Counted from the stretch's first letter, positions 8,789 to 16,210 are shown. The stretch is 64,000 nt of DNA from Magallana gigas (GCF_963853765.1 NC_088859.1:46934001-46998000); one strand, 5' to 3'. Numbers and translations are program-made. The notes: generated by a model not told the origin, from the letters alone.

Positions 8789-11615
8789 TCACTGGGAGGG
8801 ATAGAGCACTATCTTACAGTCCTTCCCCTCAAACAAAGCTTTGAACGCGTCCTCGTACCGTGACATCGGGAACCTGCTCGTGATGACCTTTTTGACGTCA
8901 ATTTTACCGTCTGCCACTAACTTTTCGGTTTCCACCCAAGTGTGATAGATCTGGCGGCCATGAATGGTCTTCAATGTTAACGCTTTGAACACTGTAAATA
9001 TTTGAATAATTTAAGTATCATATTATTTTAACTTCCTCATGAATATTTATATACATGTAACCAGTGTAAGTAATTAATATATAATGTTTGTCTATTTGTA
9101 AACGTAATTGTTTCTGTGTGCATGTGTGTGTGTTTTATTTACATCTCCAGGTGAGATTGTCCACGTGTAATTGTTTATTTTTATTTGACCATTCGACTAC
9201 CCGTTTGACCTGTCTGACAACGTTCTAAATTTAACTTCTACTTACCAATCTTCCCGCCTAACTAACCAGGCCCGCGCACACTTTGTCTTGCCTTGAGAGG
9301 GGACAGACCTGTATGCATGAAGATTAAGCGCAAGCTTTGTCTGCGATTAGCTGCGGGTGTCTGGTAATTCTTGTGTAATTTATTACTTATAAATATATTC
9401 TATGTTTATAATTTAACAATTCCATGCTATATATTAAATAATCTTTATCCAAGTTATTGTACCGTATTCTGAGATAATTGTCAAATGAGTCAATGTTGTA
9501 TGTTTCAGGTTTTTCGTATTTATTGAATAAATACATCGTATGACCCTCACTGGTGTTCTGTCTACTGCCTGGGTTACATACAGATGGATATTTTTTTCTT
9601 AAAAATGTCTTGATAGTCATTTTAATAACTGAAGGCAATTTTTAGAACTTTTAAAAATTTTCCAGTAATATTTTGGTAAATAATCTTGTACTAGGAATTT
9701 GTTGATATCAAATTCTGAGTGATGTTTTCTTATTTTCTCCCTATTTTTTCTAACCTTCTATCTCACCAGAGTACCAGTTAAATAAGTGATTTACAACAGA
9801 TAAACCTAGTTTATCGACTCTGAAACTATGTTTCGCTCATTTTTGTGAATTTGCGTGCCATATACATCGCTACTTAATTCTTATTTTAAACTCGTAGAAT
9901 GATGATCTTCTTGTAAAAGATTGTATTCAAAAAGTATCAATTTGACCGCTTAATATTCAGATGCACACTTAACATAACAATTACACCCGAATGTACATAA
10001 AATTACTGTATTAATTTTATTGTGGCACTCCATACATTTGGATGAGTAGGATGGGCCTTTGAACTAGAACTAGTACTTATGAGCATGCAAATTTTACAAT
10101 ACTTGGTGCTGAGGTACAAGATAAAGGCATACAAAGATGTTTAATTTTTTCTTTACATACCGACGTCCTGAAGAACATTCTCCACATGAAGGGGTTCCTT
10201 GGGGAGACCCACCAAGGTCATCTGTCCACCCTTCCGGAGCATGGAGAAGGTCAAGTTGACCATGGAGCTGGCGCCGCTACACTCACAGATCCTGCCCATC
10301 CCGTCACCATTGGTAAATTCCATGACAAACTAATAATCCATTTATGTGTGACATTAAATAGCGACACACGGTCTAGATATGAAGTTAGAGATCATTGCAG
10401 AAAAAACATAACCAAATGACACGTGGTAGTTTCTTTTCATGTAACCATTGCTACCTTTATACAAAAATGAAACACCAAAGAAAGCAACTTGTAAAGAAAA
10501 TATATACATCACAAAATTCAATATACAAACATGTGTGAACATCAACGCAGGCTACTCAGTTTGCTTATTTCTACATGTCCTTGAAACTGCTGACGACTAA
10601 GCAGAAAAAATACCCTTTACATTTATCTTAGAAAATTTTAACGTTAAATTCATTAACATAATCGCACACACTAAATTAAAATACAATACTAAAGTATTAA
10701 TATCTTACTTCTTTCAGGTTTTTATCCTTTGTGTTGACTATTACGTCTGCTCCAAAGGACTTTGCCATATCAAGTCGGCTTTGGTCAATATCAGCTGATA
10801 CAACCCTGAAATGTATCCATCAACTTAAATGTTGCACACAATTTTTCGGCAAATTCAAAAAAGTAAGAAAATGTTATTAGAACTGTAGAATTTCTACAGA
10901 AGTGCATGAAAGTTTTAAGATAAACCTGTTTGCCCCGAGAGCCTTAGCAACCATAAGTACCAGTAGACCAACTGGTCCGCAACCAATGACGAGGACGTTT
11001 TCTCCCGCCACTTCAAGTCTCTCCACGGCGTTGTGAGCGACACCTAGCGGCTCCAGCATAGCAATCTCGTCTGCGTCTGGAAAGAAGTAAAACAAACTTT
11101 AGCTGCAGATTGCCGATGGTTTATGATTTAGTTACTCTAACTTATACAACGACAATAGATTGCTTACCAATATTCCTTGTCAATTGGTACAGATATTTTG
11201 CTGGCACAATTGTATACTCGGAACAACCTCCATAAGGCGTCTTCTTGCCGTGACCAAACTGCCCCATGTTCTTGCATATGGCCTTGGTGTCATGTTGACA
11301 CTGGTAACACTCCCCACAGTAATAGTGGTTCTCCACCCCGACACGTGCCCCAACCGCCACCCCTTTGACATCGGGGCCACATTTGACCACTGTCCCTGCA
11401 CACTCGTGACCTGGCGTAAATGGAATCGAGGCTATGACCTGCGCCACCTGGTTCCAGGTATACAAGTTGATGTCAGAACCACAGACAGACACCGCATCCA
11501 CTTTGATAAGAACTTCGTCACCGCTAGGCTCTGGTATTGGCACATCTAGGTACTCAAAAGACTTGCCTTCCTTCGTTTTCACAAGCGCTTTCATAGTGGT
11601 GGTTGGAGCAGCCAT
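8789..11615 (-). CDS. tdh: Zn-dependent medium-chain dehydrogenase of the prokaryotic L-threonine 3-dehydrogenase type (355 aa); candidate 2-keto-3-deoxy-L-rhamnonate 4-dehydrogenase
   Basis: Exons 11168-11615, 10926-11076, 10709-10805, 10161-10329 and 8789-8991 total 1068 nt in frame. Motifs: catalytic Zn VCGSD, GHE and LEPLG; structural Zn CGECYQCQHDTKAIC; Rossmann GCGPVG with a downstream Asp (SADID, NAD-type); C-terminal VFKALTLKTIHGRQIYHTW, resembling archaeal/bacterial TDH. The symbol denotes the family only. Confidence 0.92.
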
Positions 11616-14911: not shown

Positions 14912-16210
14912 ATGGCCGCGGCAGAAGGAAAGACTAAAATATTTCCTAGAATCAAATGTGTACGGGCGTACGTCTCTGAGTCCAAGCCCGAGGACCAGGG
15001 CGCTGACTGTCACGATGTGGAGGACACTCACTGGATCAATGGCTACCCCACCCCCATCGCCAACCCGATGTCTGGGTACGAGCAGTACGCCTCCACTCGG
15101 AAGTCCTGGGGCATCAATGCTCTCGGTACTTTGGTTGTAGAGGTGGAAGCAGACGACGGGACATGTGGAGTCGGCGTCACTATTGGCGGAGTGCCAGGCT
15201 GTTACATCGTGGAGAATCACCTTAGCAGATTCGTGGAGGGACAGGACCCTCGCGATGTGGAACTTATGTGGGACCAGATGTTCAGAGCTACCCTCAACTA
15301 CGGGCGCAAAGGACTGCCAATTCAGTGCATCAGTGCCATCGATTTAGCGTTGTGGGATCTGCTTGGAAAGTTGAGAAATGAACCTGTGTATGCATTACTT
15401 GGCGGGAAAACCAAGCAACGTCTGCCGGTGTATTCCACTACCGCTCGTCCAGACATTGCTAAACAATTAGGCTTTGTTGGGGCAAAAATTCCTTGTGCCT
15501 ATGGGCCAGCTGATGGGGATGAGGGTCTAAAGAAAAATGTAGAAATATTCAAACGATGGCGCGAGACAGTGGGTCCTGACTTTCCGTTGATGTTAGACTG
15601 CTACATGGCACTAACCGTACCGTATACTGTTAAATTGGCAAGAGCACTAGAGCCTCTGGGACTAAAATGGATTGAGGAATTCTTGCCTCCAGATAGCTAC
15701 GATGGGTACAGAGAAGTGCGCGAGGCATTGAGGAGTTCCACGGTTTTACTAACCACCGCCGAACACGAGTACAGTCGCTATGGTTACCAGCTGCTCCTCA
15801 ATTCTAAATGCGTGGATATACTCCAACCAGACATTTCGTGGCTGGGTGGCATTACAGAAGCGCGCAGAATCGTTGCCATGGCTTCCGCCAACGATGTCTT
15901 AGTAATTCCCCACGGATCCAGCATCTATTCCTATCACCTACAATACGCCTTCCGGAATTGTCCACTGGCGGAATTCATCAACCTGAGTCCAAAAGCTGAC
16001 AAGATAGTCCCGTACTTTGGCGGGCTGTTCCCAGACGAACCTTTGCCTTCCAATGGTTTCATAGACCTACCAGATCGTCCCGGATTTGGTGTGACCTTGT
16101 GCAAGGACAGTCTTCGTCGTCCATTCCAGCGCAGTGATGAAGAATCTAGAGCCCAGGCGTCTAAAAACGCCACGTACAAGTCTCAAGAGAAACCTCACAT
16201 GCCATTTTAG
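14912..16210 (+). CDS. rhmD: L-rhamnonate dehydratase (enolase superfamily, mandelate racemase subgroup, RhmD/LRA3 family), single coding exon, 432 aa
   Basis: Uninterrupted ORF colinear with RhmD as I recall it: DCHDV..HWI, PMSGYEQYASTRKSWGINALGTLVVEVEA, AIDLALWDLLGK, GAKIP..GP.DG..G, LMLDCY (metal Asp), LKWIEE (metal Glu), AEHE (metal Glu plus His), QPD, PHGSS.YS.H (general base His), AEF, RPGFGV. AATAAA at 16404. Confidence 0.95.
   Translation: MAAAEGKTKIFPRIKCVRAYVSESKPEDQGADCHDVEDTHWINGYPTPIANPMSGYEQYASTRKSWGINALGTLVVEVEADDGTCGVGVTIGGVPGCYIVENHLSRFVEGQDPRDVELMWDQMFRATLNYGRKGLPIQCISAIDLALWDLLGKLRNEPVYALLGGKTKQRLPVYSTTARPDIAKQLGFVGAKIPCAYGPADGDEGLKKNVEIFKRWRETVGPDFPLMLDCYMALTVPYTVKLARALEPLGLKWIEEFLPPDSYDGYREVREALRSSTVLLTTAEHEYSRYGYQLLLNSKCVDILQPDISWLGGITEARRIVAMASANDVLVIPHGSSIYSYHLQYAFRNCPLAEFINLSPKADKIVPYFGGLFPDEPLPSNGFIDLPDRPGFGVTLCKDSLRRPFQRSDEESRAQASKNATYKSQEKPHMPF

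What the first reader, a model, noticed from the sequence alone, without database searches (positions are those of the whole stretch)
8789..16210. Head-to-head rhamnonate dehydratase + Zn-MDR dehydrogenase pair: a candidate L-rhamnose catabolic module in an animal genome
Seen: two microbial-type cytosolic enzyme genes are divergently oriented, with start codons 3.3 kb apart, between ordinary animal genes (calpain, FAM13). Established: in non-phosphorylative L-rhamnose catabolism, RhmD/LRA3 converts L-rhamnonate to 2-keto-3-deoxy-L-rhamnonate (KDR). In the diketo-hydrolase variant, KDR is then oxidised at C4 by an NAD-dependent dehydrogenase. That enzyme is an SDR in Sphingomonas but a Zn-dependent MDR in Sulfobacillus thermosulfidooxidans. 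Inference: the neighbouring NAD-type Zn-MDR, which sequence alone would label threonine dehydrogenase, may be the KDR 4-dehydrogenase. The pair would then be a co-regulated two-step module letting a filter feeder use rhamnose from algal or bacterial polysaccharides. I know of no described animal rhamnose pathway, but I could not search the literature.
Basis: partly seen in the sequence, partly recalled or inferred. Interest (0 to 1): 0.92.

Follow-up and report, generated by a model that had tools for sequence, protein, structure and literature searches.

The report
Oyster rhamnonate dehydratase–dehydrogenase gene pair
An oyster genome carries an intact sugar-acid dehydratase gene and a threonine-dehydrogenase-like gene back to back; both are old animal genes, the pairing is kept only in oysters, pearl oysters and ark clams, and nothing found here shows that they work in one pathway.

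Summary
An intronless 432-aa RhmD/LRA3-family dehydratase (14912-16210, +) and a five-exon 355-aa Zn-MDR (8789-11615, -) lie head to head, with 3.3 kb between their start codons, between calpain and FAM13-like exons. The window comes from a Crassostrea/Magallana gigas-like oyster.

RhmD membership is solid. It scores above the curated HMM cut-off, all catalytic residues are present, and its best solved relatives are RhmDs. It is not a recent microbial import: orthologues at 65-80% identity run from choanoflagellates and sponges to molluscs, and NCBI already labels them "L-rhamnonate dehydratase-like".

The MDR is also an ancient holozoan gene. It fails both curated TDH cut-offs and lies outside the kbl-linked TDH clade. 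It is also not an orthologue of the Haloferax MDR-type KDR dehydrogenase RhcE (AU test p 2e-98).

The head-to-head pair recurs in Saccostrea, Pinctada and Tegillarca. The genes are unlinked in at least 13 other animals. The MDR occurs in phyla where no RhmD was found, and RhmD occurs where no MDR was found. None of 45 bacterial RhmD loci holds such an MDR, and none of 80 metagenomic MDR loci holds RhmD.

Verdict: two real genes and a pteriomorph-specific conserved adjacency. A two-step rhamnose module is possible but unsupported (about 0.17).

The parts
14912..16210 (+). Intronless RhmD/LRA3-family acid-sugar dehydratase gene, 432 aa including a ~25-aa C-terminal extension that is conserved in the eukaryote copies compared and absent from E. 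coli RhmD
   Evidence: NF011968 515.8 bits against cut-off 393. Pfam MR_MLE_N and MR_MLE_C. Best solved relatives are RhmDs: 2oz3/3ekg, 3fxg, 2p3z. H34, D229, E255, E284, D307 and H334 align to E. coli RhmD H33, D226, E252, E280, D302 and H329. 99.8% identical to XP_011420754.2 'L-rhamnonate dehydratase [Crassostrea gigas]'.
11168..11615 (-). MDR exon 1: start codon, GroES-like domain, catalytic Zn ligands C45, H70, E71 and the four-Cys structural Zn lobe
   Evidence: Pfam ADH_N 96 bits; GT donor at 11167-11166
10926..11076 (-). MDR exon 2: LEPLG motif with the fourth Zn ligand E157, and the GCGPVG nucleotide-binding motif
   Evidence: AG acceptor and GT donor present
10709..10805 (-). MDR exon 3: the Asp of 'SADID' that marks an NAD-type cofactor site
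10161..10329 (-). MDR exon 4
   Evidence: Pfam ADH_zinc_N
8789..8991 (-). MDR exon 5 with the stop codon
   Evidence: TDH HMM positions 277-339
11616..14911 (.). Divergent intergenic region of 3,296 bp and 33% GC; the presumed promoters of both genes lie here
   Evidence: The equivalent region measures 6.4 kb in Saccostrea, 2.2 kb in Pinctada and about 1.8 kb in Tegillarca. blastn found no conserved non-coding block between any two of the four.
17470..17699 (-). Decayed copy of the last MDR exon and its 3' flank, a relic of a tandem duplicate of the pair
   Evidence: tblastn 70-75% with a frame break; blastn 87-89% to 8738-8993
20314..20709 (+). Decayed copy of the RhmD 3' end and its 3' flank, with an in-frame stop; the other end of the same relic
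   Evidence: tblastn 67.5% with a stop; blastn 77-87% to 16106-16594
1549..1911 (-). Calpain exon of the flanking animal gene
   Evidence: Pfam Peptidase_C2, 6e-20
31787..32128 (-). RhoGAP exon of the flanking FAM13-like gene
   Evidence: Pfam RhoGAP, 2e-17. The window stretch 22.2-26.7 kb is syntenic with the gene next to RhmD in Saccostrea. The old M. gigas model K1PJ18 'FAM13B' runs on into an MDR exon-1-like piece.

Best explanation
These are two ancient, vertically inherited holozoan metabolic genes that lie head to head in pteriomorph bivalves. They are not shown to be steps of one pathway.

Gene 1 is a true RhmD/LRA3-family enzyme. Inferred mechanism, from the family: a Mg2+ ion held by D229, E255 and E284 stabilises the enediolate; H334, with D307, removes the C2 proton of an L-lyxo-configured aldonate, most likely L-rhamnonate; the 3-OH is then eliminated to give the 2-keto-3-deoxy acid. 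It has no N-terminal presequence, so it is probably cytosolic. It would feed a non-phosphorylative 6-deoxyhexose route like the mammalian L-fucose route (HSD17B14, ENOSF1, candidate BDH2).

Gene 2 is an NAD-type, two-zinc MDR dehydrogenase. It belongs to a holozoan clade related to threonine dehydrogenases but outside them. Its substrate is unsettled, probably a small secondary alcohol or hydroxy-acid. Its distribution shows that its ancestral role does not depend on RhmD.

The adjacency arose in, or was kept only by, Pteriomorphia. It may reflect shared regulation or simply an unbroken neighbourhood.

Shown here: gene structures, family membership, catalytic residues, phylogenetic placement and synteny pattern. 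Inferred: substrates, cellular location and regulation.
For: RhmD: equivalog HMM above cut-off; catalytic residues intact; nearest solved structures are RhmDs. Orthologues at 65-80% identity occur in molluscs, brachiopod, annelids, flatworm, sponges, choanoflagellate and other protists, and the lophotrochozoan branches follow the species tree.

MDR family placement: orthologues occur in sponges, cnidarians, Capsaspora, crustaceans, tunicates, molluscs, annelids and Lingula. They score 287-325 bits against TDH HMMs whose cut-offs are 380 and 458. In the tree the holozoan clade (100/99) joins prokaryote MDRs that sit next to an epimerase-family gene (99/95). It does not join the kbl-linked clade (100/97) that contains E. 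coli Tdh. Archaeal TDH structures score 334 bits with a kbl-linked member but only 232 with the bivalve MDR.

Against a link between the two genes: the AU test rejects a clade of the holozoan MDRs with RhcE, p 2e-98. The pair is absent within 10 kb in Pecten, Haliotis, Lingula and Salpingoeca. The genes lie on different contigs or chromosomes in 13 species (contig lengths). 0 of 45 bacterial RhmD loci has a TDH-like MDR, and SDR is their commonest neighbour. 0 of 80 metagenomic MDR loci has RhmD. No other rhamnose-pathway homologue is in the window.
Against: The head-to-head arrangement is kept in Ostreidae (this window, Saccostrea), Pteriidae (Pinctada) and Arcidae (Tegillarca). In the Pinctada and Tegillarca loci no other flanking coding segment of the window is shared. 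By my own estimate these lineages split some hundreds of millions of years ago, so the adjacency could be under selection for co-regulation.

A Zn-MDR that looks TDH-like does serve as KDR dehydrogenase directly beside rhcD in Haloferax, so a convergent recruitment is biochemically plausible.

The MDR differs from kbl-linked TDHs at conserved positions beside the fourth zinc ligand (V162 for Asn, H164 for Val) and at C131 for Phe.

The absence calls across taxa rest on top-120 hit lists and are not proof of absence.
Confidence: 0.55

Rival explanations
1. In pteriomorph bivalves the neighbouring MDR is the KDR 4-dehydrogenase. It oxidises the product of the RhmD-like enzyme to 2,4-diketo-3-deoxy-L-rhamnonate, which an FAH-family hydrolase splits to pyruvate and L-lactate. 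The two genes are co-regulated from the divergent intergenic region.
For: The head-to-head pair is conserved in three pteriomorph families. There is precedent for an MDR-type, TDH-like KDR dehydrogenase next to a rhamnonate dehydratase in Haloferax (rhcE-rhcD), and the Sulfobacillus enzyme is reported (Bae 2015, cited in PMC10444878). The MDR fails the TDH cut-offs and lies outside the kbl-linked TDH clade. Its nearest prokaryote relatives sit in sugar-type neighbourhoods, not beside kbl. Neither protein has a presequence.
Against: The MDR is not an orthologue of RhcE (31% identity; AU p 2e-98). It is present in cnidarians, decapods, tunicates and cephalopods, where no RhmD appeared among hits down to 63% identity. 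RhmD is present in scallops, venerids, Dreissena, Owenia and Salpingoeca, where no MDR appeared. The genes are unlinked in 13 species. 0 of 45 bacterial RhmD loci carries such an MDR. The intergenic length varies from 1.8 to 6.4 kb with no conserved block. No hydrolase, lactonase or rhamnose dehydrogenase gene is nearby. An SDR (BDH2) is the candidate for the analogous step in the mammalian fucose route (PMC13406643), so an SDR could serve here as well.
Confidence: 0.17
2. Same pathway, different step. The MDR acts upstream as an aldose 1-dehydrogenase on L-rhamnose or a related 6-deoxy sugar, in the manner of archaeal Zn-MDR glucose dehydrogenases. It would supply the lactone, and so the acid, that the RhmD-like enzyme dehydrates.
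For: The precomputed Pfam hits of the MDR orthologues include PF16912 (glucose dehydrogenase C-terminus). The pair is conserved in pteriomorphs.
Against: The same phyletic and synteny discordance applies as for the KDR-dehydrogenase reading. The known rhamnose 1-dehydrogenases seen here are SDRs (Sphingobium and Haloferax clusters). Nothing specific supports this step.
Confidence: 0.05
3. The dehydratase is real, but its physiological substrate in animals is not L-rhamnonate. It would be another acid sugar of similar configuration, such as L-lyxonate, L-mannonate or D-gulonate, which by my recollection of Rakus 2008 E. coli RhmD also turns over. 'Rhamnose catabolism' would then be the wrong label for the locus.
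For: Identity to E. coli RhmD is only 47.7%. The eukaryote copies compared carry a conserved C-terminal extension that E. coli RhmD lacks. No paper on an animal RhmD was found among the 40 listed of 51 papers naming the enzyme.
Against: It scores well above the curated equivalog cut-off. Its nearest solved structures are the Azotobacter, fungal and enterobacterial enzymes, deposited mostly as L-rhamnonate dehydratases; the top entry, 2oz3, carries only the generic enolase-superfamily name. Fungal members of the same eukaryote-wide family are the LRA3 genes of rhamnose catabolism (PMC5674754).
Confidence: 0.15
4. Contamination or a recent horizontal transfer from bacteria.
For: The RhmD gene is intronless. 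An earlier first-reader note on the same ORF raised this.
Against: The gene sits between calpain and FAM13 exons, next to a gene with four spliceosomal introns. It is intronless at the same kind of locus in Pecten, Haliotis, Lingula, Pinctada, Saccostrea and Tegillarca, and has introns in Salpingoeca. The lophotrochozoan branches follow the species tree. Its 41% GC differs little from the surroundings.
Confidence: 0.01

Closest known systems
L-rhamnonate dehydratase RhmD/YfaW (E. coli, Salmonella), LRA3 (Azotobacter, fungi)
   Same: Full-length alignment with the same Mg2+ ligands and the same His/Asp base. Passes the curated equivalog HMM. 47.7% identical to E. coli RhmD. Best PDB hits are 2oz3/3ekg, 3fxg/2p0i and 2p3z.
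   Different: It is an animal gene with no operon partners: no aldolase, transporter or regulator as in E. coli rhmRTDA. It carries a ~25-aa C-terminal extension that is conserved in the eukaryote copies compared. Its activity is untested.
[quoted passage not shown] 2015)
   Same: The same two protein families sit side by side. RhcE, like the oyster MDR, has TDH as its best HMM hit, below the cut-off.
   Different: The oyster MDR is only 31% identical to RhcE and lies in another clade (AU p 2e-98). rhcE-rhcD are co-directional inside a full rhc cluster with lactonase, hydrolase, rhamnose dehydrogenase, mutarotase, transporter and regulator; the oyster pair is divergent and stands alone. The Sulfobacillus sequence could not be obtained.
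Zn-dependent L-threonine 3-dehydrogenase (E. coli Tdh with Kbl; archaeal TDHs 2dfv and 3gfb)
   Same: Same fold, both zinc sites, an NAD-type site, and the His that aligns with E. coli Tdh His90 by my numbering of the E. coli row. TDHs are its best characterised relatives (232 bits, against 136 for sorbitol dehydrogenase).
   Different: 33% identical to E. coli Tdh. It falls below both curated cut-offs and outside the kbl-linked clade. It has a 3-residue insertion after the structural zinc lobe and differs at conserved TDH positions F121, N152, V154 and G285 in E. coli numbering.
Mammalian non-phosphorylative L-fucose degradation (HSD17B14, ENOSF1, candidate BDH2; hydrolase unknown)
   Same: An animal, cytosolic, oxidative route for a 6-deoxy-L-hexose with an enolase-superfamily dehydratase at its centre (PMC13406643, PMC11293516).
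   Different: It uses a different dehydratase subfamily (L-fuconate dehydratase, not RhmD). Its candidate 4-dehydrogenase is an SDR, not an MDR. No gene clustering is described.
Sphingomonas/Sphingobium LRA cluster (diketo-hydrolase variant)
   Same: It has an RhmD orthologue, 49% identical.
   Different: The dehydrogenases there are SDRs, and FAH hydrolase, amidohydrolase-type lactonase and RhaT lie adjacent. None of these has a homologue in the window.

Membership tests
RhmD/LRA3 L-rhamnonate dehydratase (enolase superfamily, mandelate racemase subgroup) | Full-length match to the curated equivalog model, above its cut-off | tested here: met
   NF011968: 515.8 bits against 393, profile positions 4-394 of 395
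RhmD/LRA3 L-rhamnonate dehydratase (enolase superfamily, mandelate racemase subgroup) | Three carboxylate Mg2+ ligands at the ends of barrel strands 3-5 (E. coli D226, E252, E280; numbering recalled from Rakus 2008) | tested here: met
   D229, E255 and E284 align exactly and are invariant in 12 eukaryote sequences
RhmD/LRA3 L-rhamnonate dehydratase (enolase superfamily, mandelate racemase subgroup) | His general base with its Asp partner (E. coli H329/D302), and His33 | tested here: met
   H334, D307 and H34 align and are invariant
RhmD/LRA3 L-rhamnonate dehydratase (enolase superfamily, mandelate racemase subgroup) | Dehydration of L-rhamnonate to 2-keto-3-deoxy-L-rhamnonate | not testable with these tools
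   Needs an enzyme assay
Zn-MDR L-threonine 3-dehydrogenase (Tdh) | Score above the curated cut-offs of the TDH equivalog models | tested here: not met
   Close orthologues, including P0315 at 78% identity, score 287-325 bits against cut-offs of 380 (NF003808) and 458 (TIGR00692). The window's scanned exon pieces (four of five exons) sum to about 240 bits.
Zn-MDR L-threonine 3-dehydrogenase (Tdh) | Catalytic Zn ligands (Cys, His, Glu, plus Glu/Asp), four-Cys structural Zn site, GxGxxG and an acidic residue for NAD | tested here: met
   C45, H70, E71, E157; four conserved Cys starting at C100; GCGPVG at 181; Asp of SADID
Zn-MDR L-threonine 3-dehydrogenase (Tdh) | Membership of the clade that holds kbl-linked and biochemically characterised TDHs | tested here: not met
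   The holozoan clade groups with epimerase-linked MDRs (99/95). The kbl-linked clade with E. coli Tdh is separate (100/97). Archaeal TDH structures score higher with a kbl-linked member than with the bivalve MDR.
Zn-MDR L-threonine 3-dehydrogenase (Tdh) | NAD-dependent oxidation of L-threonine | not testable with these tools
   Needs an enzyme assay
MDR-type 2-keto-3-deoxy-L-rhamnonate 4-dehydrogenase (Haloferax RhcE, Sulfobacillus KDRDH) | Orthology to a characterised MDR-type KDR dehydrogenase | tested here: not met
   31% identity to RhcE. RhcE pairs with another H. volcanii MDR (100/100). The AU test rejects a clade of holozoan MDRs with RhcE, p 2e-98. The Sulfobacillus sequence was not obtainable.
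MDR-type 2-keto-3-deoxy-L-rhamnonate 4-dehydrogenase (Haloferax RhcE, Sulfobacillus KDRDH) | Genomic association with a rhamnonate dehydratase gene | tested here: inconclusive
   Adjacent in this window, Saccostrea, Pinctada and Tegillarca. Not adjacent in Pecten, Haliotis, Lingula or Salpingoeca, and on different contigs in 13 species.
MDR-type 2-keto-3-deoxy-L-rhamnonate 4-dehydrogenase (Haloferax RhcE, Sulfobacillus KDRDH) | Co-occurrence with RhmD across taxa | tested here: not met
   MDR without RhmD in the listed cnidarians, decapods, tunicates, cephalopods and Capsaspora. RhmD without MDR in the listed scallops, venerids, Dreissena, Owenia and Salpingoeca. This rests on top-120 lists and is not proof of absence.
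MDR-type 2-keto-3-deoxy-L-rhamnonate 4-dehydrogenase (Haloferax RhcE, Sulfobacillus KDRDH) | Oxidation of KDR at C4 | not testable with these tools
   Needs an enzyme assay
Non-phosphorylative L-rhamnose catabolic gene cluster (LRA1-6 / rhc) | Further pathway genes at the locus (rhamnose 1-dehydrogenase, lactonase, KDR aldolase or diketo-hydrolase, mutarotase) | tested here: not met
   tblastn of the Sphingobium, Haloferax and E. coli pathway proteins against the 64-kb window found only RhcE against the MDR. The rest of the genome was not available.

The most novel reading that the evidence does not exclude
Pteriomorph bivalves, and possibly other algae- and bacteria-feeding invertebrates, have an endogenous oxidative L-rhamnose pathway. 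In it a TDH-related MDR was recruited independently of the archaeal RhcE line as the dehydrogenase partner of the RhmD-like enzyme, acting either on KDR or on the free sugar. The pair has been held head to head under a shared regulatory region since early in pteriomorph history. This would be the first animal rhamnose catabolic module, and a convergent re-invention of the haloarchaeal MDR plus RhmD pairing.
Probability: 0.17. Interest if true: 0.75.

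Novelty: new member of a known kind. Interest (0 to 1): 0.45.

Why it matters
No animal pathway for L-rhamnose breakdown turned up in the paper library: none of the 40 listed of 51 papers naming rhamnonate dehydratase concerns an animal enzyme. 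Yet a very strongly conserved RhmD orthologue, 65-80% identical from choanoflagellates to molluscs, persists in many aquatic invertebrates. Rhamnose and fucose are common in algal and bacterial polysaccharides. The analogous mammalian L-fucose route is only now being assigned to genes (PMC13406643). An assay of the oyster enzyme would show whether animals themselves, and not only their microbes, burn rhamnose.

The MDR result matters for annotation. The 'L-threonine 3-dehydrogenase-like' label on hundreds of invertebrate genes rests on a family that fails the curated TDH criteria and whose substrate is unknown.

The conserved head-to-head pair in pteriomorphs is a concrete, cheap test case for co-regulation. 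On present evidence it is a lead, not a pathway.

Tried and rejected
1. Recent horizontal transfer or contamination was rejected on flanking animal exons, introns in the MDR, the same intronless gene in six other lophotrochozoans, and a tree that follows the species.

2. Canonical TDH was rejected as a confident label on HMM cut-offs and clade placement.

3. Orthology with an MDR-type KDR dehydrogenase was rejected for RhcE.

4. Bacterial neighbourhoods as support for the pairing gave nothing: 45 RhmD loci and 80 MDR loci show no such pairing. One MDR locus (L124) has a distant enolase-superfamily gene, 26% identical to RhmD, which is not RhmD.

5. A conserved non-coding element in the divergent intergenic region was not found by blastn, even between the two oysters. 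This is a weak test.

6. Rakus 2008 (PMC2562705) is not held, so catalytic residue numbers come from memory. They were checked by the exact D/E/E/D/H mapping.

7. The first pHV3 region I fetched was the xylose/arabinose cluster, not the rhamnose cluster. The MDR there served only as an outgroup.

8. The Pomacea look-up failed because the protein is not on record, so whether its two genes, on one 45-Mb chromosome, are close is unknown.

9. The alignment with 17 MDRs was too divergent for the metagenome scan. It was repeated with 11.

10. Two literature searches with generic taxon words returned nothing useful.

11. The protein-atlas search added nothing beyond family names.

Full report
**What is there.** The window has no N and is AT-rich. 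On the plus strand an uninterrupted ORF at 14912-16210 encodes 432 aa. All four introns are GT-AG, and the product is a 355-aa protein with no frame problem. The start codons are 3,296 bp apart and point away from each other. A calpain exon (1549-1911, -) and a RhoGAP exon (31787-32128, -) confirm ordinary animal neighbours.

**Which organism.** The RhmD-like protein differs at one residue from XP_011420754.2, 'L-rhamnonate dehydratase [Crassostrea gigas]'. It shares a 90% cluster with C. virginica and Saccostrea sequences. The window is therefore from a Crassostrea/Magallana gigas-type oyster, and automatic annotation already names the gene. Oysters have a second paralogue that is 93.5% identical (K1QWB0).

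**The dehydratase.**
- It scores 515.8 bits on NCBIfam's RhmD equivalog (cut-off 393) over the whole profile.
- Its best solved relatives are the Azotobacter (2oz3/3ekg), Gibberella (3fxg/2p0i) and Salmonella/E. coli (2p3z, 2i5q) enzymes. All but the top entry were deposited as rhamnonate dehydratases; 2oz3 carries only the generic family name.
- Aligned with E. coli RhmD (47.7% identity), residues H34, D229, E255, E284, D307 and H334 fall on H33, D226, E252, E280, D302 and H329. The numbering is recalled from Rakus 2008, a paper that was not held. These residues are invariant in twelve eukaryote sequences.
- Membership of the family is as well supported as sequence can make it. The physiological substrate is inferred.

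**It is not a microbial intruder.** Orthologues of 65-80% identity occur in bivalves, gastropods, a chiton, Lingula, annelids, Macrostomum, four sponges, Salpingoeca and other protists. The gene is intronless in Pecten, Haliotis, Lingula, Pinctada, Saccostrea and Tegillarca, and has introns in Salpingoeca. In a tree, the lophotrochozoan sequences follow the species tree. The deepest branches of that tree are unresolved, and one frameshifted row distorts the rooting.

**The MDR is equally old.** Orthologues are found in sponges, cnidarians, Capsaspora, crustaceans, tunicates, cephalopods, gastropods, bivalves, annelids and Lingula, mostly labelled 'L-threonine 3-dehydrogenase-like'.

**Is the MDR a threonine dehydrogenase?**
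- It has both zinc sites and an NAD-type fold.
- TDHs are its best characterised relatives (3gfb at 232 bits, against 136 for sorbitol dehydrogenase).
- Every orthologue scanned scores only 287-325 bits against two TDH equivalog models whose cut-offs are 380 and 458.
- I fetched 80 metagenomic relatives with their flanks and sorted them by neighbour. Seven sit beside kbl, so they are real TDHs. Seventeen sit directly beside an NAD-dependent epimerase/dehydratase gene. Eleven sit near a PdxA-family gene, in some loci together with 2-oxoacid-dehydrogenase complex genes.
- In the tree the holozoan clade (100/99) joins the epimerase-linked group (99/95). The kbl-linked clade, which includes E. coli Tdh, is separate (100/97).
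- The archaeal TDH structures score 334 bits with a kbl-linked sequence, 278 with an epimerase-linked one and 232 with the bivalve MDR.
- Seven positions are conserved in kbl-linked TDHs and conserved but different in holozoans. Two of them lie just after the fourth zinc ligand.
The substrate is open.

[quoted passage not shown] That work is cited as Reinhardt 2019 in PMC10444878. RhcE is a 344-aa Zn-MDR whose best HMM hit is also TDH (217 bits). But the oyster MDR is only 31% identical to RhcE. RhcE pairs with another Haloferax MDR on the far side of a well-supported split, and an AU test rejects a clade of RhcE with the holozoan MDRs (p 2e-98). Any KDR activity in the oyster enzyme would have to be an independent recruitment.

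**Linkage in animals.** The head-to-head pair recurs in three other genomes:
- Saccostrea cucullata: 6.4 kb between the starts, and the FAM13-like flank is shared as well.
- Pinctada imbricata: 2.2 kb between the starts.
- Tegillarca granosa: about 1.8 kb between the starts. Here the RhmD ORF is intact but not annotated.

In the Pinctada and Tegillarca loci no other coding segment of the window is shared. So the pair has been kept across three pteriomorph families.

Elsewhere the genes are not linked:
- No MDR lies within 10 kb of RhmD in Pecten, Haliotis, Lingula or Salpingoeca.
- The four intergenic regions share no detectable block.

**Co-occurrence.** In the listed hits the MDR is present in nine cnidarians, nine crustaceans, five tunicates, three cephalopods and Capsaspora, with no RhmD among hits down to 63% identity. 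RhmD is present in three scallops, Mercenaria, Ruditapes, Dreissena, Owenia, Halichondria, Macrostomum and Salpingoeca, with no MDR listed. These are top-120 lists and do not prove absence, but whole phyla are discordant.

**Bacterial context.** Forty-five bacterial RhmD loci of 47-68% identity carry no TDH-like MDR within the flanks available, up to 10 kb each side. Their commonest neighbour is an SDR, followed by sugar transport and LacI genes. A Sphingobium plasmid shows the classic cluster: SDR, RhmD, FAH, SDR, amidohydrolase, RhaT. No homologue of a rhamnose dehydrogenase, lactonase, KDR aldolase, diketo-hydrolase or mutarotase lies in the 64-kb window.

**Reading.**
- I judge the dehydratase a real enzyme of a non-phosphorylative 6-deoxy-sugar route. 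Its closest animal analogue is the mammalian fucose route (HSD17B14, ENOSF1, candidate BDH2; PMC13406643), where the candidate 4-dehydrogenase is an SDR.
- I judge the MDR a dehydrogenase of unknown substrate whose ancestral job does not depend on RhmD.
- The pteriomorph adjacency is genuine and old. It could mean shared regulation, or even a lineage-specific functional link, but orthology, phyletic pattern and prokaryote context all fail to support the two-step module.
- I put the module at about 0.17.

**Novelty.** The genes are already annotated automatically, and no paper on an animal RhmD was found among the 40 listed of 51 papers naming the enzyme. New here are two results: the conserved pair in pteriomorphs, and the demonstration that the invertebrate 'TDH-like' clade is neither a canonical TDH nor an RhcE-type KDR dehydrogenase. 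This is a new member of a known kind, of moderate interest, with a cheap decisive experiment.

**Earlier notes.** The scan's two earlier first-reader notes on these same genes were considered. The horizontal-transfer idea for the RhmD ORF is contradicted. The four-intron description of the TDH-like gene agrees.

Noticed in passing
window 17470-17699 (-) and 20314-20709 (+): A decayed second copy of the pair's two outer ends: the last MDR exon with its 3' flank, and the RhmD 3' end with its 3' flank. Both are in the same relative orientation but only 3.2 kb apart. It looks like a tandem duplicate of the whole head-to-head unit that later lost its middle. Saccostrea shows no such relic between RhmD and the FAM13-like gene.
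   Followed up: partly
window 16135-16207 (C-terminus of the RhmD ORF); alignment A1: The eukaryote RhmD orthologues compared share a ~25-aa C-terminal extension ending in 'MPF', with N419 and P431 invariant in 12 sequences. E. coli RhmD lacks it. Its function is unknown, and it is not a classic peroxisomal SKL signal.
   Followed up: no
L058 6912-8192 (-), Tegillarca granosa CM056594.1: An intact RhmD ORF, 78.7% identical to the window's, is not among the called genes of this assembly. The neighbouring MDR model there is truncated (270 aa).
   Followed up: partly
P0123 (UniProt K1PJ18, 'Protein FAM13B', Magallana gigas, 947 aa): This old gene model fuses FAM13B with an MDR exon-1-like piece (residues 845-940, 91% identical to the window's MDR). 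That implies a paralogous or allelic copy of the same neighbourhood, and a mis-joined annotation running across the RhmD gene.
   Followed up: partly
P0446 (K1QWB0 / XP_011444991.1): Oysters have a second RhmD paralogue, 93.5% identical to the window's. Its genomic neighbours were not examined because only a 4-kb contig is on record.
   Followed up: no
L074-L096, L102, L132 and L008 (metagenome contigs): In 17 metagenome loci plus L008, a TDH-like Zn-MDR lies beside an NAD-dependent epimerase/dehydratase-family gene (PF01370), within 60 bp in 15 of the 17, and no kbl was detected on any of them. This uncharacterised pair forms the prokaryote group nearest to the holozoan MDR clade.
   Followed up: partly
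window 39365-40585 (-): A 406-aa ORF with a partial reverse-transcriptase domain (RVT_1), probably a retroelement fragment.
   Followed up: no
window 62009-63992 (+): Two long ORFs (322 and 323 aa) in a stretch of raised GC (48%) and strong AT skew. The second carries ankyrin repeats.
   Followed up: no
window 14684-15220 (-): A 178-aa ORF antisense to the start of the RhmD gene. Its matches in other species follow the RhmD coding sequence, so it is a shadow frame, not a gene.
   Followed up: partly
L056 7221-8261 (-), Haloferax volcanii pHV3 27220-28260: A second Haloferax Zn-MDR, 48.5% identical to RhcE, sits beside an SDR and an FAH-family gene at the edge of the xylose/arabinose cluster. 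It may be another 2-keto-3-deoxy-sugar-acid dehydrogenase.
   Followed up: no
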